This document shows, piece by piece, positions 3,271 through 62,660 of a stretch of DNA of 64,000 bases; positions within the stretch are counted from its first letter, which is position 1; the number at the start of each line of letters is the position of its first letter. The notes beneath the pieces are model-generated. The model saw nothing but the letters and a program-made list of their open reading frames with translations. It searched no databases and had not been told where the DNA came from. The stretch spans positions 124,001-188,000 of the IMG/VR virus record IMGVR_UViG_3300035181_000357. One strand, 5' to 3'. Both the position numbers and the translations under genes were made by a program.

Positions 3271-4080
3271 ATGGAATATACACAAGAGCAAATTGCTAGT
3301 CATTTAGATACATGCCTATCCATTAGTGGATTCTTTGAAGGAAGTAACTTCAATCCCAGATATGATAATGCTACAGACAATTTTGATGGGGCAGGGATCA
3401 GTTGTGGATGCTTACAATGGGCTGCAGGCCCAGGATCTCTATCAACATTTCTAAAACACTGCTTACACAATATGGATGAGGCAAAAGCCAATGCATACTT
3501 CAGTGAATTTGGTGATTCTGTAGTCACAAATATGTCCAATATGAATGGAGACCAGGCTAAGAACTATAGCCTCGCGAATTTTTTAGATGGTGCAGGGAAA
3601 TGGTTACCAAATGCAAAGGCAGCATGGAAAACCTTCCTAGTAGATGAAGATGTTATCAAGACTCAAAGACAAGTCGCACAAGATGATATTCTGATGAAAG
3701 CATATAGTCTAGTCTCAAAGTTCACACCAGGTGAAGAACTAAATTTGAGAGCTATTGCCTTCTTCTTTGATATCGTAGTACAGTCTGGTGGTATGAAGAA
3801 CAGCCGTGGAAGTGTTGAACCAGTTAAGAAAGAGAATGCTGGATCATATGTTAAGGCTGTTGATGAGGCTAGGGCACAAGGCAAGCAATGGACCGCAGAT
3901 CGTTGGGCTAATTCTACAGATGAACCTATTAGCCGCTGGCTTCTACACTACGCATATGAGAGAGCTCAATTAAGCCTCCCTCAGTGGCGTTGGAATGCCT
4001 TAGCCAGAAGAGGTACTATTGCGACCAGATGGGGTTATGTAAATAGTACGAAGATAGATTTAACTAATAAACTGCCTTAA
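3271..4080 (+). CDS. Putative endolysin, lysozyme/chitosanase-like fold
   Basis: FEGS...NFDGAGISCGCLQW motif typical of phage lysozyme-like muramidases. Confidence 0.6.
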   Translation: MEYTQEQIASHLDTCLSISGFFEGSNFNPRYDNATDNFDGAGISCGCLQWAAGPGSLSTFLKHCLHNMDEAKANAYFSEFGDSVVTNMSNMNGDQAKNYSLANFLDGAGKWLPNAKAAWKTFLVDEDVIKTQRQVAQDDILMKAYSLVSKFTPGEELNLRAIAFFFDIVVQSGGMKNSRGSVEPVKKENAGSYVKAVDEARAQGKQWTADRWANSTDEPISRWLLHYAYERAQLSLPQWRWNALARRGTIATRWGYVNSTKIDLTNKLP

Positions 4081-48913: not shown

Positions 48914-50434
48914 ATGAGATTCATAAACGAATACACCCAGAAATCAGCTAATACCCCAGAGATCAAGGTCTTCACTGATAAGAGCACATATCACAAGCTA
49001 GCGAAAGTAGCTTTGACTGGTGTACTAAACGGTCAGTACTACAAATCTGAGGACAAGATAGTCAGTGAACTAACTTCTGTAGTTGAGAAGATGGCAATCG
49101 AAGATCCTATCTTCTTGCTAAAGGCAGCTAAGGCTAGCCGTGCCCTCAACATGAAGTTGTTCCCTAAGCTAGCTGTCGCTGCTGTCCTATCGAAGTCACA
49201 GGACAAGTCTGTAGATCCAGAGATCGAAAAGATTCTGGCTACCTACAACCCAAACCAGCTTTTAGAGTTCATCTTGATGTTGAAGAACCGTCAGTATGGT
49301 TCTGGCCTGGGGTCTAGATCACAGAAGCTCGTCGCTCGTGGACTAGCTCGTGTCTCAGCTAAGCGTCTAGAGGATTGGACTCTGTCCGAAGGTTCTAGCC
49401 TTAACAGAATCCTACGTCTCGTTCACCCAACACTTAATCCAGTCGTCAAGTACGTCCTGAAGGCTGATAAGGAAGCAGAGTGGACTGATCGTCAGCGTGC
49501 ACTCGAGACCATCAAGATGCTTCAGCAGAAGAGAGAAGGGGATTACGAGGCTGAGGTAGCAGCATTAATCAAAGTCTACAATCTTCCATTCAATTCTTTG
49601 AAGGGTGTAATCTCAGCTACCAACAAAGCTGCCTGGGACGAGATCGCAGAGAACATGTCTGTGATCCAGCTCCTAATCAACCTCAAGTCCCTTGACAATA
49701 TGGGTGTGATGACCACTTCTAGACTTCGTCGTCTTCTAGATGCCAAGTTTGTAAAGGGCAAGACCAGGATTCTTCCTTTTGACATCATGCGGCCAATGGC
49801 TAATGCAGATGCTAAGTACAGGGATGTCTTGATCGAGTTCTTGGAGAAGCTAGTCCTAGATCCTATTCCATCCCTTGAGGGTAAGACCGTCGGTCTAATC
49901 TTTGACGGTAGTGGATCAATGGGTGGTCCTAACTATGCTGGTAGCCCATGGATGACTTCTATGGCCTTGGGTCTGCCTCTTATGTCCAGCTGTAATGTAG
50001 CTGAGTCCATCATCTATTCTACCACTGTCCGAAAGGCTCCAGAGTTCAGAAAGTATGATGGTGCAGAGAACTTCAAGCGTATCTCCGAGGCATTCCCATC
50101 TGGTGGAACCAACACCGATATGGCGATTGACCACTTCACCAAGAACAACATCGTTGTTGATGTTCTTGTTCTCATCACTGATGAGCAGCAGAACGGCTAC
50201 AGGTGTGGTGGATTCCAGAACGCCTGGGCAAGATACAGAAAGCTTCACCCAGAAGCAGAACTACTTATCGTAAACGCTACTCCATATGAGTGGCACATGA
50301 CAGAGACTGGAACCAATGGTGTCACCATCGTCCAGACTCTGACCCCAGCTGTTTACCAGATGATCCAGTACCAGGGTCAGGATATGGTAGACGTCATTTC
50401 CAACATGGAACTAGGAGACAGCAATGAAGATTAA
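48914..50434 (+). CDS. Ro60/TROVE-like ribonucleoprotein with C-terminal vWA domain
   Basis: Helical N-terminus, QLLINLKSL, MIDAS DGSGSM, GGTNT, LITDEQ. Confidence 0.7.
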   Translation: MRFINEYTQKSANTPEIKVFTDKSTYHKLAKVALTGVLNGQYYKSEDKIVSELTSVVEKMAIEDPIFLLKAAKASRALNMKLFPKLAVAAVLSKSQDKSVDPEIEKILATYNPNQLLEFILMLKNRQYGSGLGSRSQKLVARGLARVSAKRLEDWTLSEGSSLNRILRLVHPTLNPVVKYVLKADKEAEWTDRQRALETIKMLQQKREGDYEAEVAALIKVYNLPFNSLKGVISATNKAAWDEIAENMSVIQLLINLKSLDNMGVMTTSRLRRLLDAKFVKGKTRILPFDIMRPMANADAKYRDVLIEFLEKLVLDPIPSLEGKTVGLIFDGSGSMGGPNYAGSPWMTSMALGLPLMSSCNVAESIIYSTTVRKAPEFRKYDGAENFKRISEAFPSGGTNTDMAIDHFTKNNIVVDVLVLITDEQQNGYRCGGFQNAWARYRKLHPEAELLIVNATPYEWHMTETGTNGVTIVQTLTPAVYQMIQYQGQDMVDVISNMELGDSNED

Positions 50435-50903
50435 TATCGACTGTGGTGTAGAGAAGTATGTCATCAAGATTGATGATGGCGCTGTTTCTTTCAAGAATGG
50501 AGATCTGTTCTTGAAGTCTGATAGTGTCACCATCAATAGGAGTGTCTTCGAACCAACGAAGATCCTAGTAGTTCCAGATGCTGTCAAGACTAAGGGTCAG
50601 CAACTGAGAGAGCTCCGTGTTCAGTATGGCCTGACTCAGAAGGAACTTGCAAAGAAGCTATCACCAAATCCTAGCAGGTTTAGTAATGGTCTCACGGATA
50701 AAGACATCTCAAACTATGAAACAGGTAGGAAAGATGTTCCATTCTGGTTGCTACCACATGCTAAGGAATTGTTAGAAGCTGAGAAAGAGCAATGGGAACT
50801 CCGATCAGACGCGGATGGGTTATTATGTCGTGGGCGCCATTCTCGTCGTGTTCTGTCCAAGGCAGAGATTGGAAAGGCACTAGAGACTTCGAAGAAGCGA
50901 TGA
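50424..50903 (+). CDS. XRE-family HTH protein
   Basis: LRELRVQYGLTQKELA...ISNYETG. Confidence 0.7.
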   Translation: MKINIDCGVEKYVIKIDDGAVSFKNGDLFLKSDSVTINRSVFEPTKILVVPDAVKTKGQQLRELRVQYGLTQKELAKKLSPNPSRFSNGLTDKDISNYETGRKDVPFWLLPHAKELLEAEKEQWELRSDADGLLCRGRHSRRVLSKAEIGKALETSKKR

Positions 50904-51145
50904 GTTGGTGGATTAAGTTTAAGAAGCTGCTAGGTTTGGAAACGCTAATAGTTCATGGAATGTTCCCGGACGAATATGAACTATTAGCGTACCATATATC
51001 CTTCGAATCCACTAGAGGGGTATCTAGAAATAGTGCTATTAGAACTTGGGTTCTATCTAGGAACGAGTATTTAAGGAGAAAGAGAACTAACTTTGATTTT
51101 GTCGATGCAGATTCGAAGAGAAGGATATGGATAGAGGAACGATAA
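50900..51145 (+). CDS. Hypothetical protein
   Basis: ATGA overlap with upstream stop; 81 aa. Confidence 0.4.
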   Translation: MSWWIKFKKLLGLETLIVHGMFPDEYELLAYHISFESTRGVSRNSAIRTWVLSRNEYLRRKRTNFDFVDADSKRRIWIEER

Positions 51146-51243
51146 TAATGGATAGATAACTAAAAAGAAAATAGCTATTATCAAGAGAAAATTACTATAT
51201 CCTGCCTTTCATTTCGCTGATCCTGTGAGCACTGGGGGATGAT

Positions 51244-51429
51244 ATGACCAGAGATCCTAATGGTAATCTCGAACCACATACTTATCCTGAGTTAGTTGCT
51301 ATCATCAACGATCTAGATAAGAGAGTCCTCGCTCTAGAAACTGAACTCACAGAAGTCAAAAAGATAACTATTTCAGGTGCACGAGAAGCACATGATGTGA
51401 GAGTGATGGGTCCTATGAGGTTCAAATGA
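51244..51429 (+). CDS. Hypothetical coiled-coil protein
   Basis: 61 aa, coupled to next ORF. Confidence 0.5.
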   Translation: MTRDPNGNLEPHTYPELVAIINDLDKRVLALETELTEVKKITISGAREAHDVRVMGPMRFK

Positions 51430-51776
51430 GTTGGTCATTTATTTCTTCTCCTCCTGGTTGGTGGGCTATCTATTGTCGAGATGGTAATCGAATGGCTATG
51501 CCTATCGTCGCCTGGAGAATGGATACAGATAACCGTGATCCAGAGGATATTTTAAATAATCCTGAGGCAGCTTCTCCATACGGAGAGCCTATGATCCAAT
51601 CTGGTGATGGTATGCTAGAATCAGCGTTTGGTCAAGGTGGATATATTGGCCATGAACTGAAACAGCGATCTGATTTTCGAGATGGTTGGATGTTCGAATA
51701 TGCAGACTTCATTCCTAAAACCAAAGGCATTCTCCGTAGACCTAAGGGTGACTGTATCTGGTGGGAGCTAGTATGA
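51426..51776 (+). CDS. Hypothetical protein
   Basis: 116 aa, ATGA overlap. Confidence 0.55.
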   Translation: MSWSFISSPPGWWAIYCRDGNRMAMPIVAWRMDTDNRDPEDILNNPEAASPYGEPMIQSGDGMLESAFGQGGYIGHELKQRSDFRDGWMFEYADFIPKTKGILRRPKGDCIWWELV

Positions 51777-52108
51777 GAATCTTCGATGTCGTTGCATTCT
51801 CAATCATAGGTATTATCATGTACTTCATGGTCGCATGGGCTTTATCTGACATGTGCCTGATGCTCTTTGAGAAGTATGATATCAAGGTTCGTAAAACTAT
51901 ACATGTAGCTTGCTTTGCTGCAATGCCTCTCATGCTAGTTATAGTTACTATCTACGTCATGTATCTGATGATCGTAGGATTTGTGAATATCCTATATATC
52001 ATTGAAAAGAAATATGGCTATTTGATCTTGGTAAATAAGTTCCTTCGATGGATTAAGAGAAAGATCGTTAACTTCTTCAGATTTAGAGGTGAAGATGAAC
52101 AGGTATGA
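51761..52108 (+). CDS. Hypothetical membrane protein
   Basis: Two hydrophobic segments; likely start ATG 51773. Confidence 0.5.
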   Translation: MGASMRIFDVVAFSIIGIIMYFMVAWALSDMCLMLFEKYDIKVRKTIHVACFAAMPLMLVIVTIYVMYLMIVGFVNILYIIEKKYGYLILVNKFLRWIKRKIVNFFRFRGEDEQV

Positions 52109-52310
52109 ACAAACTAGCTACTAGATATGGATTTGGTGGTCATTTCAGATATGTAAAGAATGAAAATCCATCTAATGATCTACCATATCATAACATGTGT
52201 ACAGTTATCGAACTTTCTAACTGTAATATACATAACTAAGTATCCTTTGTCTGGTCTTCAAGGGAGAGTACTACGGTACCGGAGAAAGACCTAAATAATT
52301 ATTGGATGGG

Positions 52311-52336
52311 TAAGAGCCTGGGTTTCCAGGCTCTTA
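52311..52336 (+). terminator. Hairpin/terminator
   Basis: TAAGAGCCTGG-GTTT-CCAGGCTCTTA. Confidence 0.6.
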
Positions 52337-52354
52337 TTATAGAGGTTCATATCT

Positions 52355-52612
52355 ATGATTCAAGAATGGGTTCTACAAACCGTCCTATGTGATGATCCAG
52401 GAGCTATGGCAGTAGATTGGGACACTTTTAATATCGGTGTGGTAGAAGATGGGGTATTCAGGTCGATATACAGTTGCTGGTGTCTCCCTGATGCAGAACA
52501 TCTGTTATCAGCATTGCGTTGGTATTCCACATTCTCTAAAGATGGTATCATAAAAGAACCTGTACAACCTGTTCCTCAAACAAAGAAACGAAAGAAAGTA
52601 TCTGATGTATAA
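52355..52612 (+). CDS. Hypothetical protein
   Basis: 85 aa, AGAGG RBS. Confidence 0.55.
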   Translation: MIQEWVLQTVLCDDPGAMAVDWDTFNIGVVEDGVFRSIYSCWCLPDAEHLLSALRWYSTFSKDGIIKEPVQPVPQTKKRKKVSDV

Positions 52613-55052
52613 TCCTTTAACTGGTTTCGAAAATGATCCAAAGGTATCGAATTGTATTCGTGCTTTCGCTGAACATCCAGAGATTGCTGAAGAGATTAAA
52701 GCATACTATATCCTAGAAAAGGTAGACGATGATGGATATACAGAAGACCGTCATCTCATAGCAGAAACCACCTGGAAGACTGGTGATTTCATTCATTTCA
52801 CACATAAGATTGTAGGTAGAGACTTTCAAGATCCATATGAAGGTCACGAAGGTCCTACTGATGGTAGAGATTTTGAAGGTCAGTTTGCTATAATCCCAAA
52901 GAAGAGAGCAAAGAAGATCATAGATTTTCAGAAAGCTTTAGGAAAAGTTACTAAATATAGAAATCTTGAAGATATCCCAAAGAGAGAAGACATGAAGAAG
53001 AAATCTAGACTAGTGACTAAAAAATCTACCGGACCTACTTTGTATTCAAAGTTAGAAGATATCAAAAATGAAATCGATAAATATCTGAAGTGGGATCATG
53101 TCAATGACGACACAAATGAAGATATTCCAGAAGACAATATCACTGCCTCCTATAGACTGTATACAAAAGAAGGAATCATCATATTCTCTGTATCAGTCTT
53201 TGATAAGACGAAGAATGGAAATGAGATCTTCACCGGATTCTCTAAGCCAGGATCCGAACAATTTGAGAACACTGGTCTATATAATTTCAACAACGTGAAC
53301 AAGATGCTGAAGAATGTAGCTAATGTCGCAGCTACAAAATATCATATCGAGGAAGCACCTGTCGAAGATCTTCCAGAGATGGGTAACGATGATGACAAAG
53401 AATTCCTAAAGTCGATCGGGATTCGTTCTAGTCAGAAGAAGGCATATGCTCCTAATGTAGCTCAGGCAGCTAACACTTTTTTAGAGAAATACATTGGAAA
53501 GATTCTGTCTCCGAGTGAGTTGAAGGAAGCTATATCTTCCGTATCTAGTTCCTGGAAAGATGTAGTAAACTACATGAAAGATTTCAGTTTGATAGTACCT
53601 GATGGGAATAATTTTAAGATCTTAAATAGAGATATGGTGGATGACATGAAGATTCGTACTGGTTCAAAACATGCAGCAACTAGCCCAACTCCTCCTGGAG
53701 CTGCGTTGGTATCAGCGATCAAAAATCGTAAACAGAACCCTGAAGATTTCGAGACATTCAAGGCCTTGTTTAATGCCTTTAAAGAAGATTTCAGTGCAAC
53801 CAGCGGTCAGGAAGGATGCTACTACATCATGGAGCGTCTAGGATTCTTAGAGAAGGATATAAATCCTCTCTTAGGTTTGGGTAGTACTGGAACTCCTGAA
53901 GAGAAGTTCGTCAGAAATTATTGGGATGAAGTGAACCGTCAGTATGATGAAAAGAAGAATCAAGATCGTACTACCAAGTATGGCCCAGACTTAGTGGCTC
54001 TCTGTAAGGAAGTTTATGCCTACGCAAACCAGCCTGAGAATTACGAGAATGGCTGGGACACGGTTGCAGAAGCTTGGGACCTAGAAGAACTGGCTGAAGA
54101 GATTAAGGACTGCAAGACCTTGGATGAAGCTCTCTCGATTATGAAGCAATACAAGACAGCATCCTCAAAGACTGGTAAGCAGAAACGCTCGAGATTGATG
54201 AAGCGCAGAGCAGGGATCGAGTTAGATTGGGATCCAGCTACCAGAAGAGACATAGGTAGAGAAGAAGCCAGAGCTAGTGACAAGATCCTAAGAGATCTCG
54301 GCACATATGTAGAGAAATTAAAATCTAGCCTGATACAAAATGGTGTATCTCTTGGCCAAGCTCTATCAAACATGAATCTGAAAGAGTTATTCACCTCTAC
54401 TGACTATACAAAGAGATCGCTCGGTAACAAGTTGAGATCACAGACAGAACAGTTCCTAAAGAACTATCCAGAGAAGGAACAGAACTTCTTTAAAGAGAAT
54501 TATGGACAGAACATTTCAGATATTCTAAGAAAAGTGGTAAAGACTAGTAATATAGATCCACAGATGTATGATATCAAACCTGATATCTCTCAAGATGTAT
54601 TGGAGAAGAAGTCCATGGATGCAGATCGTTACTATGGTGGACCTGACGAGAGTGGTCCAGATCCCGACGAAGTTACACAAGCACTAGTCTCTAAGTTCCC
54701 AATGGCTTTAGGGTTCATTTCTCAGAAGATAGATCCTCAGAGTCCTGACTGGGATATCATGAATAAAGTCAGTGACGAGATGTATCCAAAGGAATTTATC
54801 GACAGAGTAGAGGTTGATCTTTGGGATGGTGATGACGTATACTATTTCGATTATGATGTAGACGCTTCTGAGATTGAGCAGATCAATGCCAATTTCTTGA
54901 AGAGACAACATGAGTTGGGTTCTACGAATCCTGAACCTCTCTGCAAGCTCGAACTCGTCCCATATCACGAGCTACCCAATAAGGTCATTGAGAAGCTAGA
55001 AGAAGACTTCGAAGACTATGTGGACCTGGATCCTGAACCATGGGTTGATTAA
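52605..55052 (+). CDS. Large acidic multi-segment hypothetical protein (candidate internal virion protein)
   Basis: 815 aa; acidic blocks separated by short basic linkers. Confidence 0.65.
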   Translation: MYNPLTGFENDPKVSNCIRAFAEHPEIAEEIKAYYILEKVDDDGYTEDRHLIAETTWKTGDFIHFTHKIVGRDFQDPYEGHEGPTDGRDFEGQFAIIPKKRAKKIIDFQKALGKVTKYRNLEDIPKREDMKKKSRLVTKKSTGPTLYSKLEDIKNEIDKYLKWDHVNDDTNEDIPEDNITASYRLYTKEGIIIFSVSVFDKTKNGNEIFTGFSKPGSEQFENTGLYNFNNVNKMLKNVANVAATKYHIEEAPVEDLPEMGNDDDKEFLKSIGIRSSQKKAYAPNVAQAANTFLEKYIGKILSPSELKEAISSVSSSWKDVVNYMKDFSLIVPDGNNFKILNRDMVDDMKIRTGSKHAATSPTPPGAALVSAIKNRKQNPEDFETFKALFNAFKEDFSATSGQEGCYYIMERLGFLEKDINPLLGLGSTGTPEEKFVRNYWDEVNRQYDEKKNQDRTTKYGPDLVALCKEVYAYANQPENYENGWDTVAEAWDLEELAEEIKDCKTLDEALSIMKQYKTASSKTGKQKRSRLMKRRAGIELDWDPATRRDIGREEARASDKILRDLGTYVEKLKSSLIQNGVSLGQALSNMNLKELFTSTDYTKRSLGNKLRSQTEQFLKNYPEKEQNFFKENYGQNISDILRKVVKTSNIDPQMYDIKPDISQDVLEKKSMDADRYYGGPDESGPDPDEVTQALVSKFPMALGFISQKIDPQSPDWDIMNKVSDEMYPKEFIDRVEVDLWDGDDVYYFDYDVDASEIEQINANFLKRQHELGSTNPEPLCKLELVPYHELPNKVIEKLEEDFEDYVDLDPEPWVD

Positions 55053-55078
55053 GTCCACTATCTATAGTAAATAGTAAA

Positions 55079-55111
55079 TTGTCTCCTGGTACCATAAAAC
55101 GGTAATCTAGT
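55079..55111 (+). promoter_or_regulatory. Conserved phage promoter motif, copy 6
   Basis: TTGTCT-N18-TAATCT-AGT. Confidence 0.75.
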
Positions 55112-55134
55112 CTAGTTCCTTTCTGGAGGTAGAC

Positions 55135-55641
55135 ATGCTGTTAATCAACCAGTGTCCAGTTTGTGGTGCTAGCACTCGTGAACATAAGCCTGGTGGAGAA
55201 TATCCTGGATACAAGGAGACTAGGAACCAGTGTCTTGGTTGTGAACCTGGTCGTCCCAAGCAGATCACGATGCTCTATACCACAAGCGATGCTGGCAACA
55301 AGCCTTGCTACACCCATTTCAAGGCGTCTTCTGACTATCGAGAGATCCAGAAGCATCTCCGAGAGAACAGCACAACGATGGGTTTCTCCATCCAGTACGC
55401 CTACAATCCTGATACCAAGCACGTGGTATCAATCATGGTTAAGGGTAAGATGGGCTTGAAGCTTACCAAGAAATTCGTGGAACTCGGATACAGTGAATGG
55501 TTCTATTCTCATTCTTTCAGTACCAAGAAATTCCTGCTTCCCAGTGGTGAAGTCGTAACCTTGAAGCCTGAGGACGACCTCGACCTCGTGTCAACAACCG
55601 ACATAATGCCCTGGGCACGTGCCTTCGGATATGTCAACTAG
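55135..55641 (+). CDS. Hypothetical protein with N-terminal Cys pairs
   Basis: CPVC...CLGC; GGAGG RBS. Confidence 0.65.
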   Translation: MLLINQCPVCGASTREHKPGGEYPGYKETRNQCLGCEPGRPKQITMLYTTSDAGNKPCYTHFKASSDYREIQKHLRENSTTMGFSIQYAYNPDTKHVVSIMVKGKMGLKLTKKFVELGYSEWFYSHSFSTKKFLLPSGEVVTLKPEDDLDLVSTTDIMPWARAFGYVN

Positions 55642-55652
55642 GAGAAGAACAA

Positions 55653-55982
55653 ATGTCTGATTACGATGGAAACGATCTCAGTGTCCTCGCTGTCCTCGGA
55701 GTGATCGTCGCTATCCCCCTAACCATTATCACCACAGGATATACTCTTTCTGTGTTGTGGGGATGGTTCGTCCTTCGACTCTTCCCAAGCCTTCCTCCTC
55801 TCTCGATTCCTCTGGCTGTCGGGTTGTCGATGACAGTTCGCTATGTCACCAACCAGAGCTTCGATTGTGCCAAGGACGATAGCAAGAGTCCAGTCGAAAA
55901 GCTGATCTACGCTATCTTCACTCCCTTCGCCACATGTGGATTCGTACTGTTGTTTGGTTGGATCCTCCTCAAGTTCATGTAA
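55653..55982 (+). CDS. Hypothetical membrane protein
   Basis: Several hydrophobic helices; AGGAG RBS. Confidence 0.6.
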   Translation: MSDYDGNDLSVLAVLGVIVAIPLTIITTGYTLSVLWGWFVLRLFPSLPPLSIPLAVGLSMTVRYVTNQSFDCAKDDSKSPVEKLIYAIFTPFATCGFVLLFGWILLKFM

Positions 55983-55991
55983 GAGGCTACC

Positions 55992-56246
55992 ATGTTCCAT
56001 GGAAGTACCAGGAGTGATTTTGCTCTGAGTATGATTCAGGCTCGAGAGATGAACGTGGATCCTGAGATCATGCGATTGCTCGAAGATTTCGAAGCTGCGT
56101 ACGAACGAGCTTTCAAGTTTGCGATCGAACTCAAGAAACATAAGAATTTTGAAGACATCGGTGAACTACTCCGGCTTGAACTTTTCGGAGACAAAGAAGC
56201 TATCGATGATCTCTATAAAGAAATCAAAAACCGAAAGAGGGTGTAG
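55992..56246 (+). CDS. Hypothetical protein
   Basis: 84 aa. Confidence 0.55.
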   Translation: MFHGSTRSDFALSMIQAREMNVDPEIMRLLEDFEAAYERAFKFAIELKKHKNFEDIGELLRLELFGDKEAIDDLYKEIKNRKRV

Positions 56247-56247
56247 T

Positions 56248-56742
56248 TTGAAGAAGTCGCATAAGGTCATCATCCTGGCTGGTATCCCTGGTTCTGGAAA
56301 ATCCACCTATATTGAAGGTCTGATGAAGACTTTCAGTGAAGACATCTCGGTATCTATCGTGTCTGCCGATCACTATTTCATCAAGTACGGTACGTACAAG
56401 TATGTGGCACATGATATCCCACATGCTCACAAGCAGTGTCAGAACAGGTTCTCTGACGCTCTGGACATGGACGTTGACGTTATCTTTGTAGACAACACCA
56501 ACATCCTGAGTAAGCATCGCAAGCCATACGTCCAGGAGGCTCTGGATTGTGGCTATGAGGTTGAGATTCATGCTCTTCCTGCAGATGTCGAGGCTAGTGC
56601 AAGTAGGAACATTCACGGTGTGGACCTGGATGTCTGTCAGCGAATGTTCGATTCTTTCGATCTGGAGTTTGGAACTATCTACGACCATAAGCGTCAGAAG
56701 ATTGGGACTATCACCAAGGAACAGGTAGGCTTGAGTGGCTAA
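56248..56742 (+). CDS. Polynucleotide 5'-kinase-like P-loop protein (AAA_33 type), no phosphatase domain
   Basis: ILAGIPGSGKST, VSADHY, VDNTN, RNIHGV; TTG start after AGAGG (track start 56119). Confidence 0.8.
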   Translation: MKKSHKVIILAGIPGSGKSTYIEGLMKTFSEDISVSIVSADHYFIKYGTYKYVAHDIPHAHKQCQNRFSDALDMDVDVIFVDNTNILSKHRKPYVQEALDCGYEVEIHALPADVEASASRNIHGVDLDVCQRMFDSFDLEFGTIYDHKRQKIGTITKEQVGLSG

Positions 56743-57130
56743 ACAGCTATCATGTGGTGTCCTGGTTACACACAAGAATTCACTTCTTCTATGTCATGTA
56801 ACTGGGACTTACAATCGTTGGGATATTCCTAAAGGAATGCCTAATGATGGAGAAGATCACGTAGCTGCTGCTGTTCGAGAACTCAACGAAGAAACAGGGA
56901 TTGTACTCGGTGTTAACTACAGAGAGTTGGGTTACACCGAGTACACCAAGACGAAGGATTTGTTCCTTCTCTACCATGAAGGTCTGTACGAAGTATCGGA
57001 TATGACCTGTTTGTCGTTCTTTGAAGATGATCGTCCAGAGATGGATGGTTTTAGGTATTTTGATTTTAATGAAATTGTTGGCCACGTCACACCTAATCTG
57101 TATAAGGTATTGACTAAGTTCTTAGGGTGA
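56735..57130 (+). CDS. Nudix hydrolase
   Basis: PKG...GEDHVAAAVRELNEETGI Nudix box. Confidence 0.9.
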   Translation: MAKQLSCGVLVTHKNSLLLCHVTGTYNRWDIPKGMPNDGEDHVAAAVRELNEETGIVLGVNYRELGYTEYTKTKDLFLLYHEGLYEVSDMTCLSFFEDDRPEMDGFRYFDFNEIVGHVTPNLYKVLTKFLG

Positions 57131-57133
57131 GTT

Positions 57134-58225
57134 ATGGAAAGAAAGCTAGTAACTATTAGAGAGATCGCTGCAGTGAATCCTATCCCCGATGCAGATGCCA
57201 TCGAGGTGGTAACTGTAGATGGATGGAAAGTGGTCTCCAAGAAAAATGAGTTCAAGCCAGGAGATCTCTGCCTATACTTCGAGATCGACAGCTTCCTACC
57301 TATCAAGCCAGAGTATGAGTTTCTGCGTAAGAGTAGCTACAAGAAGGTCATCGATGGTACGGAAGGATTCAGACTCAAGACCGTAAAACTGCGTGGTCAG
57401 ATCAGCCAAGGTCTGGTTATGCCTATCTCAGAAGATATTCTGAAGACTCTGGCTCCAGTAGCTAGTTCGGATCTCAGGACTCTTCTGGACCAAGATCTCA
57501 CCGAGTTGTTTGGTGTGACCAAGTGGGAGCCACCTCTGTCTGCCTGTCTTTCTGGGTTGGTTAAGGGTAACTTCCCATCACATACTCCGAAGTCTGGCCA
57601 GGAGCGTATCCAGAATCTGAAATACTTCTTCGAACTCTATAAAGATGAAGAGTTCGAGATGAGTCTGAAACTCGATGGAAGTTCATGCACTATGTATTTG
57701 GATCGAGAGGATGTCTTTGGAGTCTGTTCACGTAATCTGGATCTGAAACCAGACGAGAGCAATAGCTTCTGGAAACAAGCCTATATTCATGGTGTTGAAG
57801 ACAGACTCAAGATAATTCATTCTGTATCTGGGTTGAATCTCAGTATCCAAGCTGAATTGGTTGGGGAAGGAATTCAGGAGAACCACGAGAAGATCAAGGG
57901 CCAAGATCTGTATGTCTTCAATATCTGGGACCAACACCTCGGACGATCCTTGACCCCATCTGAACGACATGCTACACTGGATGCTCTAAACGATCTCCAG
58001 GTCTTAGGTTCCAAGCCACTTAAACATGTCCCTGTAATTGGGTATGAGAAGGTCTTCACCAAGTATCAGACACTAGAAGCTCTCTTTGAATTCGTGGAAA
58101 GCCTAGCTGGGATGAATCCTGGTGTAATCCTCGAAGGCGTAGTGTTCAAGAGTGTAAGACCTATAAATGGTAGCATTGTAAGCTTTAAGATCGTCAGCAA
58201 TAAGTACCTTCTTTCCAAGAAATAA
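57134..58225 (+). CDS. ATP-dependent RNA ligase, Rnl2-related DRB0094-type
   Basis: N-terminal RKLVTIREI...DAIE, motif I KLDGSS, AELVGEGIQ, FNIW, EGVVFK, SFKIVSNKYL. Confidence 0.9.
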   Translation: MERKLVTIREIAAVNPIPDADAIEVVTVDGWKVVSKKNEFKPGDLCLYFEIDSFLPIKPEYEFLRKSSYKKVIDGTEGFRLKTVKLRGQISQGLVMPISEDILKTLAPVASSDLRTLLDQDLTELFGVTKWEPPLSACLSGLVKGNFPSHTPKSGQERIQNLKYFFELYKDEEFEMSLKLDGSSCTMYLDREDVFGVCSRNLDLKPDESNSFWKQAYIHGVEDRLKIIHSVSGLNLSIQAELVGEGIQENHEKIKGQDLYVFNIWDQHLGRSLTPSERHATLDALNDLQVLGSKPLKHVPVIGYEKVFTKYQTLEALFEFVESLAGMNPGVILEGVVFKSVRPINGSIVSFKIVSNKYLLSKK

Positions 58226-58228
58226 GAA

Positions 58229-58261
58229 TTGTCTGATTTACGAATTATTAAGTAACCTAAT
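58229..58261 (+). promoter_or_regulatory. Conserved phage promoter motif, copy 7, heading the RNA-gene island
   Basis: TTGTCT-N18-TAACCT-AAT. Confidence 0.6.
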
Positions 58262-58596
58262 AATGCCCGACGAAGTTTGCCCTGAAACCAAGTTAGAAAT
58301 TTCTTGTTCAGAGCCTGGTTGGTTGGGTAATAAGTGAAGTGAAGCGGCTGAGGCCACCCTGCTCTCTGAAAAATCAATAACTTAATGGTATCGAACGCAT
58401 CCGAGATTCAGGTCTCCGATGCTGAGATGAAACCACTACCTTTCCTGAATCTTAGAAATAAGGCTGTCGTGAGACTGCCTGTTTCCGTATGATTGCAGGA
58501 GGTTCCAACAAAATGTGGTCGCAGTTTATGGATGAAACTGCAGATATCTAGTATATGCCTGGTTCTCGATGATCCTATAAAATCGAAAACGAATTT

Positions 58597-58712
58597 GATC
58601 CCATAGCTCAGTTGGACAGAGCAACAGCCTTATCGCACTCCTGACCAGGTGGGTTTGGAACTGCATGGCTCTAAGCTGTAGGTCGCTGGTTCGAGCCCAG
58701 CTGGGATCACCA
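58597..58712 (+). tRNA. tRNA-Arg(UCU) interrupted by 39-nt insertion in the anticodon loop
   Basis: GATCCCA/TGGGATC acceptor, A20, ACAGC/GCTGT stem, T arm, ACCA; removing 58631-58669 restores loop CTTCTAA. Confidence 0.8.
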
Positions 58713-58744
58713 AATTGGTTTCTGGATAGTGTGGCAATGCTGAT

Positions 58745-59045
58745 ACTGTTGGTTAGACCTGATACCAACAAAATACCGCTTCTAAGTAGTTGTAGCGGGT
58801 AGTCGGATAACTACTAGACTCCGACATGTTAACGCTGTTGAAGAGTCCATAACACTTGGTAGCATTACCTAAGTGGCGCGGAGTTTGGACACTGTTAGCT
58901 AAACCGCCTAATGCTAACAAATACATCTTGGGGAATACTCTCCAGTTCATAATGAAAGATGGTAGTAGGATAGAAACGGGCTAACTCCTACATGTTAACG
59001 CTGTTGAGTCTATCTTGGTGGGCATCGCTCCCACCAAGATAGACT
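58745..59045 (+). ncRNA. Two tandem copies of an unidentified ~150-nt structured RNA motif
   Basis: Shared ATGTTAACGCTGTTGA linker and three helices with compensatory changes between copies. Confidence 0.7.
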
Positions 59046-59200
59046 GTTTTACCTCCTGTCTGAATCGCCCTGATCTCGTGGTACCTGAACTTTATGTCCA
59101 TCTATATCCTGCAAATGAACTGTAGACATGGCTACCATCAGGGTTTCGAGACTCAGATCATAGGTATAGAATACTGTATTCAGTGGAGTACCACGATCCT

Positions 59201-59275
59201 GTGGCCTTAGCTCAACGGTAGAGCATCGCCCTTTTAAGGCGAGGGTTGTGGGTTCGAGTCCCACAGGCCACACCA
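59201..59275 (+). tRNA. tRNA-Lys(UUU)
   Basis: Canonical cloverleaf, loop CTTTTAA, encoded CCA. Confidence 0.95.
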
Positions 59276-59643
59276 TCCGAGGTGGGTTAAGCGTCACTGT
59301 GATGGCAGTACGGATACCCACAGCATAAACTGCATGATGCTGGTCTTTACCTCCCGATAGTAGAATCTCGAAAGAGACTACTATTATACCCGACAAACCA
59401 TTCCACTACTGACATAGTGGAAACATAAATCGGAGCCGTGTCAGCGGTAATGCGGAACATGAACTATTTGTTGCGATAGTCGTGAGTTCGCCGGGAGTTA
59501 TTAAATCCCCATGTGATGGCTCGTATTAGAGCGAAGGATGCGTAAGCACCCAACAGGCTGAAGATAACACAGCGTATCATATGTTTTTGTTTTAGGAGAG
59601 CCCTGTCAGAACTCTTCGGAGGAGGGTTAGACTCCCTATTAAT

Positions 59644-59719
59644 AGCCCTATAGCTCAGCGGTCAGAGCTGACGGCTCATAACCGTCTGGTCCTAGGTTCG
59701 AACCCTAGTGGGGCTACCA
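59644..59719 (+). tRNA. tRNA-CAU, most likely Ile2 (lysidine type); elongator Met not excluded
   Basis: GACGG-CTCATAA-CCGTC arm resembles bacterial Ile2; CCA encoded. Confidence 0.85.
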
Positions 59720-60179
59720 AATCGTTTACTAGTTCGATTCTAATAAAAACTAGTCGAGGGGGATGGGTGAAGAATGCTGGTCTCAGGATAGAGACTATTC
59801 CCATCGGGTGAGACCTTATCCAATCTCTTCCTGCAGGAGCCGCGTAAAAAAGTCAAAAGAACCTTGGTGCTACACTATGCGCGAGTTATTGATAAAATCA
59901 ATAGCGTCTCCTTTATGGATAGCGGTAGGAATTCGCTGCAAAATCCAAGGCTACCCTACTTAGGCATGCGGTAGGGTAAATTTCTCGAAATCTCAGGTTT
60001 CGTTGAACTACGAAGTAACTGTACCGTAGTGAGGAATCTGTGACAGCGACATGGGTCGGGCCATGGCTGGCGACACCAGCTAAAAAGATGTTCCTGTGGG
60101 AAGGGTAACGTATACTTTCTTCAGAAGACGTGCCAGTCCGGCTGGTGTCCAGCATGTATCTACCTCTACTGGACTTAAA

Positions 60180-60443: not shown

Positions 60444-60781
60444 GGGCCTGACAAGGTTTCGACAGGTTGTTAGCTTGGGATTGCGGTGCAGGGACTGGTT
60501 GATCAGCAGGCCAGTATAAAAGCAGATCAAACTTTAATTGCCGAGCCACAGCTCGCACTAGCAGCTTAAACACTGCTACGAGGAACCGCGAGAGGACAGT
60601 AGCGGGGAATCGTCACCACCGTCCTAGTTTCTACTAAGAGTTCGGGTAAGTAGGAGCGAAACTACGCGATCAAACGATAGTAGGCTGTCAGTCGCCGACC
60701 TATCGAGACCAGACTGACTAACCCTGTGAATGACTTCAATACAACTCTTCTTGGACGTGGGTTCGAATCCCACCAGGTCCA
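60444..60781 (+). ncRNA. ssrA: tmRNA with tag (A)AEPQLALAA
   Basis: GGGCCTG/CAGGTCC acceptor with G3-U70, TTCGAC D-loop analogue, T arm; tag ORF GCC...TAA at 60540-60569. Confidence 0.95.
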
Positions 60782-60925
60782 CATCGGTAGACTTCCTAGT
60801 TCTTACGGAGAATAGGAACATGGAAGTCTACCATACAACCCTCTAAGATAATGGATGGACAAGAGGTAGGAAATTCCCTAGCGATAGGGATTAAGATCGG
60901 CGAGTGCCGATATACGGAGGTAGTT

Positions 60926-61024
60926 ATGGCTACTGAACCAGAGGACAACGACGGTCTACTCGGGACCGAGCGTGAATCAGATGAAGAAGGTTGTCCAGAT
61001 TATGACAAGGACGACGACGAGTAA
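60926..61024 (+). CDS. 32-aa highly acidic peptide
   Basis: GGAGGT RBS; MATEPEDNDGLLGTERESDEEGCPDYDKDDDE (15 D/E). Confidence 0.6.
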   Translation: MATEPEDNDGLLGTERESDEEGCPDYDKDDDE

Positions 61025-61287
61025 CACTGTACCATAATACCGGGGATGGGGACGACAGGCCCATACAAAGCAGATCCATAGTGTAAAAACTATGGGTGAT
61101 GAAAGTCTGCCATGTCAGTTGATTCTCTAGACTGACAAACCTTAAGTTGGATGCAAACGGAAGACGACTCGCCATCGACCCCAGGCACATGGGGAACCAC
61201 GGCCTTTCCCAGATAGCGTAGTGGCCCTACGACGATGCGTGGAAGGTGGGATTATTCCCTTAAAAGCACTGTGTCATCCAACTACTT

Positions 61288-62303: not shown

Positions 62304-62660
62304 ATGTTCAAAGCTAAACTACTAAAGACTGCATCAAGTCCACAATTGACTCTGGCTCAACAAGTCTATGCTCAACATAAGGCAGAGATAGATCCTAAGA
62401 TTTTCAAGGCTGCTGACTATGTAGTTGATAATGCTATCGATCTAGATTCTGAAACTGCAGATAATCATCTATTTGGTGATGCTATATTTGAGCCATGGTT
62501 TGAAGCCAGCCCAGAATATCTCAGTATGACAGAAGAATCTGGGAACGAAGATGACGAGACCGATTATATTGGTGGTGTCTGGGAACAAGTTCTGTCTACA
62601 AATCCAAAGTATAAAGATGTCGTAGCTAAATTTGCTGACATCAGAATCAATGGATATTAA
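62304..62660 (+). CDS. Acidic hypothetical protein inside the tRNA island
   Basis: 118 aa, AGAGG RBS, N-terminal MFKAKLLKTASS. Confidence 0.7.
   Translation: MFKAKLLKTASSPQLTLAQQVYAQHKAEIDPKIFKAADYVVDNAIDLDSETADNHLFGDAIFEPWFEASPEYLSMTEESGNEDDETDYIGGVWEQVLSTNPKYKDVVAKFADIRINGY

What the first reader, a model, noticed from the sequence alone, without database searches (positions are those of the whole stretch)
58745..59045. Tandem pair of a ~150-nt RNA motif with compensatory base changes: candidate new ncRNA or ribozyme class
Seen in both copies (about 58745-58890 and 58891-59045), in order: helix TGTTGG/CCAACA vs TGTTAG/CTAACA; an A-rich linker; helix TAC-CGCT/AGCG-(G)-GTA vs TAC-ATCTT/AAGAT-(G)-GTA with the same bulged G; helix GTCGGA/TCCGAC vs GTAGGA/TCCTAC; invariant ATGTTAACGCTGTTGA; then a variable long stem (16 bp perfect in copy 2). 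Loops differ completely while pairing is kept. I could not fit hammerhead, HDV, pistol, twister or hatchet consensus, and no CDS lies downstream for a riboswitch. Inference: a catalytic or protein/ligand-binding RNA repeated among tRNAs.
Basis: partly seen in the sequence, partly recalled or inferred. Interest (0 to 1): 0.85.

Follow-up and report, generated by a model that had tools for sequence, protein, structure and literature searches.

The report
New two-hairpin phage RNA family
Two tandem ~150-nt non-coding RNA units inside a jumbo phage's tRNA gene cluster are real, and their two-hairpin core recurs in about a dozen other uncultured phage contigs yet matches no catalogued RNA family; what it does is still unknown.

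Summary
Window 58745-58890 and 58891-59045 are two tandem paralogues with the same hairpins. A covariance model built from copy 2 alone finds copy 1 at E~1e-11. All 21 modelled pairs are kept, 5 of them through double changes. Identical copies sit in a second, independent assembly. Rfam 15 has no match. It is not a tRNA or tmRNA, has no Y RNA (YrlA) features, and does not match T4 species 1/2 RNAs or HK022 put RNA. Homologues exist, but only of the middle part. That core reads (A)AUAC-stem-loop-stem-bulged G-GUA, abutting a hairpin G-NNN-GA/UC-NNN-C with a UA...UGAC or UAAC loop, then A. It occurs in at least 13 further IMG/VR and JGI phage contigs: three in tRNA arrays on the tRNA strand, one 600 nt from a Hatchet ribozyme, most in short spacers between genes. 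Covariation is strong. Helix 1, the 'invariant' 16-mer and the long 3' stem are specific to this phage. No neighbouring gene is shared between members, and relatives carrying the Ro60 cassette lack the motif in the flanks available. Verdict: a real, uncatalogued structured phage RNA family of unknown function. A ribozyme role or Ro60 binding is possible but unsupported.

The parts
58745..58890 (+). Unit 1 (146 nt): H1, core (H2+H3), 16-mer, irregular 3' stem
   Evidence: Read. Matched by the copy-2-only model R1 over 58745-58841 at 57.3 bits.
58891..59045 (+). Unit 2 (155 nt): H1, core (H2+H3), 16-mer, perfect 16-bp 3' stem
   Evidence: MFE -52.3 kcal/mol, z -4.49. It is the seed of R1.
58771..58826 (+). 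Conserved two-hairpin core, copy 1 (AAAUAC, H2 with bulged G 58798, H3, trailing A)
   Evidence: R3 56.3 bits, E 1.7e-10. Pairs counted.
58919..58992 (+). Conserved two-hairpin core, copy 2 (bulged G 58961; H2 carries an extra inner hairpin)
   Evidence: R3 53.2 bits, E 9e-10. Pairs counted.
58826..58841 (+). 16-mer, copy 1. It is lineage-specific. It holds UGUUA and UGUUG, near-repeats of the 5' strands of the two H1 helices.
   Evidence: Exact only twice in the window. Absent next to the core in L076, L080, L089 and L125.
58992..59007 (+). 16-mer, copy 2
59007..59052 (+). Terminator-like hairpin (16 pairs, 8 G-C, 7-nt loop) plus GTTTTAC tail. It is the probable 3' end of the transcript carrying tRNA-Arg and both units.
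   Evidence: Terminator scan; fold. Termination itself is inferred.
58597..58709 (+). tRNA-Arg(UCU) with a 39-nt insertion in the anticodon loop, 35 nt upstream of unit 1. It is context: same strand, presumably the same transcript.
   Evidence: Rfam tRNA 58.1 bits. Its exons are 100% identical to the uninterrupted tRNA-Arg at L077:12061-12137.

Best explanation
The two units are tandem paralogues of a non-coding structured RNA, read from the + strand together with the phage's tRNA genes.

Shown:
- The functional heart is a 56-74-nt two-hairpin core. It has an A-rich lead. H2 has an invariant UAC/GUA base and a bulged G. H3 follows with no spacer, as G-NNN-GA paired to UC-NNN-C, with a loop that starts UA and ends UGAC or UAAC. 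A trailing A closes it.
- This core defines an RNA family absent from Rfam 15. The family is scattered through unrelated uncultured phages.

Inferred:
- The transcript runs from just after the RNA ligase gene, through the conserved leader RNAs, tRNA-Arg, unit 1 and unit 2, to the terminator-like hairpin at 59007-59052.
- tRNA-processing nucleases then release the units as stable small RNAs, as happens for T4 species 1 and 2 RNAs.

Most likely mode of action (inferred, about 35-40%):
- The sequence-invariant junction and H3 loop form a docking surface for a factor that every host supplies, such as a ribonuclease, RNA polymerase or another RNA-binding protein.
- The element would then mark, protect or hand over transcript ends in polycistronic phage RNA.
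- H1, the 16-mer (which can pair with the 3' strand of H1 in place of its normal partner) and the 3' stem would be local additions of this phage.

Confidence that it is a real structured RNA family is about 0.9. The figure below is for the whole statement, including the mode of action.
For: Structure in the window:
- A model from one copy finds the other at E~1e-11.
- 21 of 21 pairs are kept, with 5 double changes.
- The copies are identical in a second assembly.

Family:
- A partial hit to H2+H3 lies in the tRNA array of L076, a related phage whose ligase is 65% identical.
- Pattern scans plus pairing filters give L080, L089, L125, L134, L146/L153/L167, L151, L178, L179/L187, L202 and L166.
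- The model R3 found a second copy, L080:488-593, that no pattern had selected. Its H3 is newly compensated, GACCGA/UCGGUC.
- On 17 distinct sequences, 95% of cells pair, 50 cells have double changes, and 0 of 500 shuffles reach the covariation score. Slid controls give 21-42% pairing.
- Among distinct pattern hits, 9 of 41 have all free H3 pairs complementary, against 2.2 expected (P=2e-4).

Context:
- In the window, L076 and L125 the core lies on the tRNA strand inside tRNA arrays.
- Most others lie in short spacers with a gene on the same strand downstream.
- No protein family is shared between member loci, which points to a host-supplied partner or a self-contained RNA.
- A terminator-like hairpin follows unit 2.
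- T4 has an annotated tandem pair of stable RNAs (119 and 139 nt) at the end of its tRNA cluster.
Against: - No expression, processing or binding data exist.
- The host is unknown.
- The pattern scans fixed the 'invariant' letters, and I filtered hits for pairing, so part of the conservation and covariation is circular. Only L076 and L080:488-593 were found by a model alone.
- G-U against A-C counts (5 against 4) do not fix the strand.
- In L089 the motif lies antisense to both neighbouring genes.
- In L219-L221 the H2 base pairs differently.
- The close relative L077 has no unit after its tRNA-Arg, so the element is dispensable.
- Promoter-like sites near 58237 are no more frequent than in shuffles.
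- A docking role is a default guess, not something the data single out.
Confidence: 0.45

Rival explanations
1. A new class of small self-cleaving ribozyme that cuts polycistronic phage and tRNA precursor transcripts. H2 and H3 with their invariant junction and loop nucleotides would form the catalytic core.
For: The distribution resembles that of known phage ribozymes (my own knowledge of those classes):
- It is patchy among relatives.
- It is multi-copy (window x2, L080 x2).
- It lies in spacers, mostly with a gene on the same strand downstream, with no associated gene family.
- It lies in or beside tRNA arrays. In L125 it ends 4 nt before a tRNA. In L179 it starts a few nt after a T-arm-like hairpin.
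- In L080 it lies 600 nt from a Hatchet ribozyme (68.6 bits).

The core is small, with sequence-invariant paired and unpaired positions.
Against: - No known class matches.
- No conserved pseudoknot, loop-loop contact or closing helix was found. Known small ribozymes usually have such contacts.
- Few unpaired nucleotides are conserved.
- Many orphan phage motifs tested by others do not cleave (my own knowledge).
- Nothing here tests cleavage.
Confidence: 0.15
2. Y-RNA-like partners of the phage Ro60 homologue (48914-50434). The RNAs would bind the Ro60 ring and tether it to a nuclease.
For: - The ORF is a real Ro60/Rsr relative. A profile of it and 7 homologues hits D. radiodurans Rsr at E 1e-16 over nearly full length, and also animal Ro60 and phage phiLo Ro60.
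- The RNAs are on the same strand, 8.3 kb downstream, in an RNA-repair cassette of kinase, NUDIX and RNA ligase.
- Two Y-like RNAs per locus are usual (PMC4201824, PMC12135203).
Against: - There is no GNCGAA motif in or near the units.
- There is no stem joining the 5' and 3' ends, and no tRNA-like domain.
- Rfam YrlA does not match.
- The units lie beyond the 4 kb usual for YrlA (PMC4201824).
- Relatives with the same Ro60 cassette (L071, L077, L072-L075) show no copy in the flanks available.
- No ORF in the other member loci resembles the Ro60 gene.
- A better candidate exists at 58431-58519, with a closing stem conserved in all cassette-bearing relatives.
Confidence: 0.08
3. A cis-acting transcription or translation control element. 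It could be an attenuator or riboswitch, or a put-like RNA that modifies RNA polymerase. It would govern read-through into the tRNA array or the downstream gene.
For: - Unit 2 ends in a terminator-like hairpin.
- The 16-mer can pair with the 3' strand of H1 as an alternative.
- In about half of the other members H3 is followed by A plus a U-run, and a start codon lies 15-60 nt further on.
- HK022 put RNA is likewise about 70 nt with two stem-loops and needs no phage protein (PMC9378689).
Against: - The downstream genes are unrelated, which argues against a riboswitch.
- In tRNA arrays no U-run follows the core.
- Unit 1 has no terminator.
- HK022 putL and putR share no sequence with the core, and R3 does not hit HK022.
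- The alternative pairing is seen only in this phage.
Confidence: 0.15
4. A small mobile or selfish repeat, or a DNA-level signal whose hairpins matter in single-stranded DNA. It would have no role as RNA.
For: - It is patchy among relatives and multi-copy, and it lies in varied spacers of unrelated phages.
- Wobble counts do not prove an RNA strand.
- L089 is antisense to its neighbours.
Against: - No terminal repeats or target duplications were seen around the units.
- The copies differ by compensatory changes rather than being near-identical as in recent transposition.
- The orientation matches the tRNAs in all three arrays.
Confidence: 0.05
5. A functionless recent duplication, or a protein-coding repeat on the minus strand (ORFs 58526-58771 and 58753-58950).
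For: Mechanical minus-strand ORFs of 65-81 aa overlap the units. Gene callers placed small minus-strand genes there in L079.
Against: - Unit lengths of 146 and 155 nt are not multiples of three, so the two copies fall in different frames of any ORF.
- The differences between copies are paired changes in stems.
- The core recurs in unrelated contigs with covariation.
- The ORFs also run across tRNA genes.
Confidence: 0.02

Closest known systems
Phage T4 species 1 and species 2 RNAs (rnaC, rnaD)
   Same: They form a tandem pair of small RNAs (139 and 119 nt) on the tRNA strand, directly inside or at the end of a phage tRNA cluster. Their function is unknown (my own knowledge). The phage here also carries rIIA and rIIB.
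   Different: There is no sequence or structure similarity. R3 with filters off finds nothing better than 9.7 bits in the T4 region. T4 rnaC carries a T-arm-like GGTTCGAATCC segment that the units lack.
Bacterial and phage Y RNAs (YrlA/YrlB, Rfam RF02553; phiLo Yrl1/Yrl2)
   Same: They are small structured RNAs, often two per locus, on the same strand as a Ro60 gene. A Ro60 homologue is present in the window.
   Different: The units have no GNCGAA or CGAA motif, no 5'/3' stem and no tRNA-like module. They lie 8.3 kb from the gene, and Rfam gives no hit (PMC4201824, PMC12135203).
HK022 put RNA
   Same: It is about 70 nt, has two stem-loops, acts without any phage protein and is read as part of a longer transcript (PMC9378689).
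   Different: No sequence is shared, and there is no R3 hit in the HK022 genome. put lies just downstream of early promoters, whereas these units lie in a tRNA array.
Small self-cleaving ribozymes of phages (hatchet, pistol, twister, hammerhead, HDV-like)
   Same: The genomic habits are alike: patchy, multi-copy, intergenic and near tRNAs. One family member lies 600 nt from a Hatchet ribozyme.
   Different: No model of any of these classes matches, even at E up to 10. No conserved pseudoknot was found. The H2 loop of copy 1 (13 nt) is too short for an HDV-like nested fold.

Membership tests
Any Rfam 15 family (4227 models) | Covariance-model score at or near the gathering threshold | tested here: not met
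   In the window 58300-59700 at E up to 10, only tRNAs and three junk miRNA or viral matches of 15-17 bits appear. No hit lies on the motif in L076, L080, L077 or in 8 further member loci.
Y RNA / YrlA | GNCGAA(N0-1)G Ro60-binding motif near the 5' end | tested here: not met
   None of the 13 window matches lies within 58226-59200, and the count is at chance level. H3 reads GTCGGA and GTAGGA instead.
Y RNA / YrlA | Long stem formed by the 5' and 3' ends | tested here: not met
   Each unit is a row of local hairpins. No conserved closing helix exists in the family (permutation p 0.27).
Y RNA / YrlA | tRNA-like domain (D and T arms) | tested here: not met
   ARAGORN and Rfam tRNA and YrlA models find nothing in 58745-59045.
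Y RNA / YrlA | Encoded within about 4 kb of the Ro60 gene on the same strand | tested here: not met
   The strand is the same, but unit 1 starts 8.3 kb after the end of the Ro60 gene at 50434.
Y RNA / YrlA | Binds Ro60 | not testable with these tools
   This needs a gel shift or pull-down with the recombinant protein.
T4-type stable RNAs of tRNA clusters (rnaC/rnaD) | Tandem small RNA genes on the tRNA strand within the cluster | tested here: met
   The units lie between tRNA-Arg (58597-58709) and tRNA-Lys (59201-59275) on the + strand.
T4-type stable RNAs of tRNA clusters (rnaC/rnaD) | Sequence or structure homology to rnaC/rnaD | tested here: not met
   R3 with filters off on the T4 region: the best score is 9.7 bits and lies elsewhere.
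T4-type stable RNAs of tRNA clusters (rnaC/rnaD) | Accumulates as a stable processed RNA | not testable with these tools
   No transcript data are available.
HK022 put RNA | About 70 nt with two stem-loops | tested here: met
   The core is 56-74 nt here, with two hairpins (PMC9378689). This is a resemblance of shape only.
HK022 put RNA | Homology to putL/putR | tested here: not met
   The put regions were read. There is no R3 hit in HK022 at E up to 0.05.
HK022 put RNA | Binds the RNA polymerase beta' zinc-binding domain and suppresses termination | not testable with these tools
   This needs transcription assays.
Known self-cleaving ribozyme classes | Match to the class consensus | tested here: not met
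   The same search does find a Hatchet ribozyme in L080 at 68.6 bits, so the method works.
Self-cleaving ribozyme (any, including new) | Site-specific self-cleavage | not testable with these tools
   This needs in vitro transcription.
Intrinsic terminator (3' stem of unit 2) | G+C-rich hairpin followed by a T-run | tested here: met
   59007-59045 has 16 pairs, 8 of them G-C, and the tail GTTTTACCTC. It is a consensus match only. The 3' stem of unit 1 has no T-run.
Proposed new two-hairpin core family | AUAC lead; H2 with UAC/GUA base and bulged G; H3 as G-NNN-GA/UC-NNN-C abutting H2; H3 loop UA...(U)RAC; trailing A | tested here: met
   Both window copies score 53-56 bits with R3. The features are seen in 17 distinct sequences. 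The letters were partly fixed by the search patterns.

The most novel reading that the evidence does not exclude
The H2-H3 core is a new class of small self-cleaving ribozyme that phages use to cut tRNA-array and polycistronic transcripts. The tandem pair in this window would be two active copies.
Probability: 0.15. Interest if true: 0.85.

Novelty: new variant of a known kind. Interest (0 to 1): 0.6.

Why it matters
Phage tRNA clusters are known to carry extra stable RNAs; the T4 species 1 and 2 RNAs have been known for decades without a function.

- Here is a second, unrelated RNA of that kind. It turns out to belong to a family spread over unrelated uncultured phages. The family has enough covariation to define a compact 56-nt core that can be synthesised and tested.
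- If the core binds a host factor, it would point to a general way in which phages handle their transcripts.
- If it cleaves itself, it would be a new ribozyme class.
- Either way, it gives annotators a model for stretches that gene callers now fill with spurious minus-strand ORFs.
- The locus also joins a Ro60 homologue, an RNA-repair cassette, an interrupted tRNA and several conserved RNAs. That makes it a good system for phage RNA biology.

Tried and rejected
1. Exact searches for the 16-mer and an 18-mer found only chance matches. In IMG/VR (54 loci) and the metagenome collection (10 loci), everything except the phage's own contig was chance, largely ankyrin-repeat coding sequence such as L039.
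2. GenBank phages gave no blastn match for the region or for other family members.
4. Relatives reached through the Ro60-like and RNA ligase proteins were checked. L071, L072-L075, L077 and L078 carry no copy in the flanks held. Only L076 does, at another place in its array. L079 is the same phage.
5. The bacterial and archaeal genome scan gave 12 hits. Only L212 scored (26.7 bits), and it lies inside a long opposite-strand ORF, so it is probably chance.
6. Y RNA was rejected on the defining features that could be tested here.
7. The T4 rnaC/rnaD and HK022 put RNAs do not match.
8. A conserved loop-loop kissing contact is seen only in copy 1.
9. A conserved closing helix making a three-way junction is not supported.
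10. An HDV-like nested fold, a hammerhead core, a K-turn and a T-loop were considered by eye and dropped. The H2 loop is too short in copy 1 and in L125, and the needed consensus letters are missing.
11. No shared neighbouring genes were found.
12. A wobble-pair strand test was uninformative.

Full report
SETTING. The window comes from an uncultured jumbo phage, IMG/VR contig 3300035181_000357 of 210,611 bp. The phage carries rIIA, rIIB, a Dda-like helicase and a nicotinamide phosphoribosyltransferase. From 58597 onward there is a long + strand array of tRNA genes with a tmRNA. ARAGORN finds 20 RNA genes inside the window and 35 in the extended locus. Just upstream, on the same strand, lies an RNA-handling cassette. 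It holds a Ro60/Rsr homologue at 48914-50434, an AAA_33 kinase, a NUDIX hydrolase and an RNA ligase at 57134-58225. A profile of the Ro60 homologue and its relatives hits D. radiodurans Rsr at E 1e-16. GenBank phages hold nothing similar at the DNA level.

OBSERVATION.
- The two units align at 71% mean column identity with MAFFT, with the stems partly out of register.
It finds copy 1 at 57.3 bits (E about 1e-11) with every helix in place, and nothing else in the window or the 4 kb beyond it.
- On the resulting alignment all 21 pairs are standard in both copies, and five differ on both sides. Sliding the 3' partners gives 31-55% pairing and no double change.
- Both units fold better than shuffles, with z of -2.4 and -4.5.
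- The shared structure is not the minimum-energy fold of copy 1. In that copy the loops of H2 and H3 are complementary over 8 bp.
- Contig L079 from another sample carries both copies unchanged.
- Unit lengths of 146 and 155 nt, and changes confined to paired positions, rule out the overlapping minus-strand ORFs.

NOT A KNOWN FAMILY.
- Rfam 15 gives only tRNAs and tmRNA at gathering thresholds. At E up to 10 it gives nothing meaningful on the units.
- YrlA is in that library; it gave a weak false hit on a tRNA pair in L076. It does not match here or anywhere between the Ro60 gene and the units.
- The Y RNA hallmarks described by Chen et al. (PMC4201824) and used for phage phiLo (PMC12135203) are absent. 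These are the GNCGAA or CGAA motif, a stem joining the two ends, a tRNA-like module and a position within 4 kb of the gene.

THE 16-MER IS NOT A FAMILY SIGNATURE. Exact searches of IMG/VR and of the metagenome collection returned the phage's own contig plus chance matches. Rescoring with the full-length model showed that nothing but the selected letters matched. The apparent tandem array in L039 is an ankyrin-repeat gene in which the 16-mer encodes N-V-N-A-V-D.

HOMOLOGUES OF THE CORE.
- Relatives were reached through the neighbouring proteins. L076 has a ligase 65% identical. It gave a local hit covering only H2 and H3, between tRNA-Glu and tRNA-Asn on the tRNA strand. The hit has the same AAUAC lead, the same bulged G and an H3 changed on both sides, GUCUGA/UCAGAC.
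- Patterns built on the letters shared by these three copies, followed by filters for pairing, found further contigs: L080, L089, L125, L134, L146/L153/L167, L151, L178, L179/L187, L202 and L166.
- A six-sequence model then found, without any pattern, a second copy in L080 at 488-593. It scores 30.8 bits and has yet another compensated H3.
- On 17 distinct sequences, 95% of cells pair and seven of 13 pairs show double changes, 50 cells in all. No shuffle of 500 reaches the covariation score, and slid controls pair at 21-42%.
- Much of this set was selected by pattern and by pairing, so the numbers overstate independence. An unbiased count is that 9 of 41 distinct pattern hits have all three free H3 pairs complementary, against 2.2 expected (P 2e-4).
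- In L219-L221 the H3 hairpin and the GGUAG letters are kept, but the base of H2 pairs differently.

WHAT IS AND IS NOT CONSERVED.
- Conserved: an A-rich lead; the UAC/GUA base of H2 with a bulged G; H3 abutting it as G-NNN-GA/UC-NNN-C; an H3 loop that begins UA and ends UGAC, UAAC or AGAC; and a trailing A.
- Variable: the interior of H2 (12-65 nt) and everything outside the core.
- H1, the 16-mer and the 3' stem occur only in this phage.
- No loop-loop contact and no closing helix is conserved.
- The 16-mer contains UGUUA and UGUUG, copies of the 5' strands of the two H1 helices. It could therefore compete for the 3' strand of H1. This is seen in two paralogues only and remains a lead.

CONTEXT.
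- In the window, L076 and L125 the core lies inside tRNA arrays on the tRNA strand. L125 is a 314-kb phage that also has a tmRNA. There the core ends 4 nt before tRNA-Leu.
- In L179 the core starts a few nucleotides after a T-arm-like hairpin.
- In L080 two copies lie in a 1.1-kb non-coding stretch, 600 nt upstream of a Hatchet ribozyme.
- Most others lie in short spacers with a gene on the same strand downstream, about half of them followed by A plus a U-run.
- L089 is the exception. It is antisense to both neighbours and has its own terminator-like hairpin.
- An all-against-all comparison of ORFs in the member loci finds no shared family beyond two pairs of related phages.
- The close relative L077 has an uninterrupted tRNA-Arg followed after about 190 nt by tRNA-Leu, with no unit between. 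The element is therefore gained and lost among relatives.
- No locus carrying the Ro60 homologue, other than the window's own phage, shows the core in the flanks available.

MECHANISM.
- Shown: a structured RNA family, its core and its habits.
- Inferred: in this phage the units are read with tRNA-Arg and end at the terminator-like hairpin 59007-59052. They would be freed by tRNA processing, as the annotated T4 rnaD-rnaC pair is taken to be (my own knowledge).
- No phage gene travels with the core, and paired positions are conserved in sequence, not just in pairing. I therefore favour a docking surface for a host-supplied factor acting on transcript ends, at about 35-40%.
- A new self-cleaving ribozyme fits the genomic habits equally well. 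It has no direct support and no conserved tertiary contact, so I put it at about 15%.
- A cis-acting attenuator or put-like element is also about 15%. HK022 put RNAs are about 70 nt with two stem-loops (PMC9378689) but share nothing with the core.
- A Ro60 partner is about 8%.

VERDICT. The unit as drawn is a lineage-specific elaboration of a smaller, more widespread two-hairpin core. Function is open and testable with a 56-nt RNA.

Noticed in passing
window 58597-58709: tRNA-Arg(UCU) is interrupted by a 39-nt insertion between U33 and U34 of the anticodon loop. Both exons are 100% identical to the uninterrupted tRNA-Arg of relative L077:12061-12137. ARAGORN misses the gene; Rfam scores it at 58 bits. 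L076:5412-5524 has a tRNA with a similar insertion starting UxUCGC(A)CUCC. L080:8207-8312 has a long tRNA (106 nt) that I did not examine. The insertion is too short for a group I intron, and it sits next to an RNA ligase and a kinase.
   Followed up: partly
window 58431-58519 (and 58226-58560 as a whole): This is a second conserved RNA. Invariant AACCACUACCUU and AAAAUGUGGU ends form a 5'/3' closing stem with a 10-nt asymmetric loop and a covarying upper stem. It occurs once here, twice in L071, and once in each of L076, L077 and L078. It is always just after the RNA ligase gene of the cassette (the Ro60 gene is visible in L071 and L077). It looks a better Y-RNA-like candidate than the finding. 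The whole 330-nt leader is about 75-79% identical to L071 and L077.
   Followed up: partly
L071:11490-11670, L076:4908-5075, L077 (same region): Relatives carry a tRNA-like domain, with a T arm and acceptor-like stem and a long insertion. It is enclosed by a 9-bp stem, GAGCUCAAU...AUUGAGC-like. That is the YrlA architecture, though Rfam YrlA does not score it. The window has no counterpart. In its place come the interrupted tRNA-Arg and the two units.
   Followed up: partly
window 48914-58225: This is an RNA-repair-like cassette on one strand. It holds a Ro60/Rsr homologue (profile E 1e-16 to PDB 2nvo), an HTH protein, an 815-aa protein of unknown family, an AAA_33 kinase, a NUDIX hydrolase and an RNA ligase with the PHA02142 OB domain. 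In L077 and L078 the ligase gene is split by a GIY-YIG homing endonuclease gene.
   Followed up: partly
window 60444-60782: A phage-encoded tmRNA (tag AEPQLALAA) sits inside the tRNA array, which holds 34 tRNA genes in L055. L125, another motif-bearing jumbo phage, also has a tmRNA in its array.
   Followed up: no
L080:1620-1705: A Hatchet ribozyme (RF02678, 68.6 bits) lies 600 nt downstream of the second of two copies of the core, in a 19.6-kb IMG/VR contig.
   Followed up: no
window 58781-58793 with 58808-58819: In copy 1 only, the H2 loop (AGUAGUUG) and the H3 loop (UAACUACU) are complementary over 8 bp; 0 of 300 loop shuffles do as well. This drives an alternative minimum-energy fold. It is not conserved in the family.
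   Followed up: yes
window 59046-59200: The 155-nt spacer between unit 2 and tRNA-Lys has a long-range stem, CGTGGTAC at about 59077 with GTACCACG at about 59188, enclosing about 100 nt. Other spacers of 370-500 nt in the array (59276-59643, 59720-60179, 60783-61287) were not examined.
   Followed up: no
window 62304-62660: A 118-aa ORF exactly fills the gap between tRNA-Pro and tRNA-Asp. It has no Pfam match. It is also called as a gene in L079.
   Followed up: no
L039:7860-8700; window 3848-3863: The 16-mer is the DNA of the ankyrin-repeat consensus G-A-N-V-N-A-V-D, which explains most database matches. The one-mismatch match at window 3848 lies inside ORF 3271-4080 and looks like chance.
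   Followed up: yes
L179:8940-9040 (- strand), L146:60-130: T-arm-like hairpins with acceptor-like tails (GCGGGGTTCGAATCCCCGC..., TGCAGGTTCAAATCCTGC...) lie just upstream of the core. Neither ARAGORN nor Rfam calls them tRNA.
   Followed up: no
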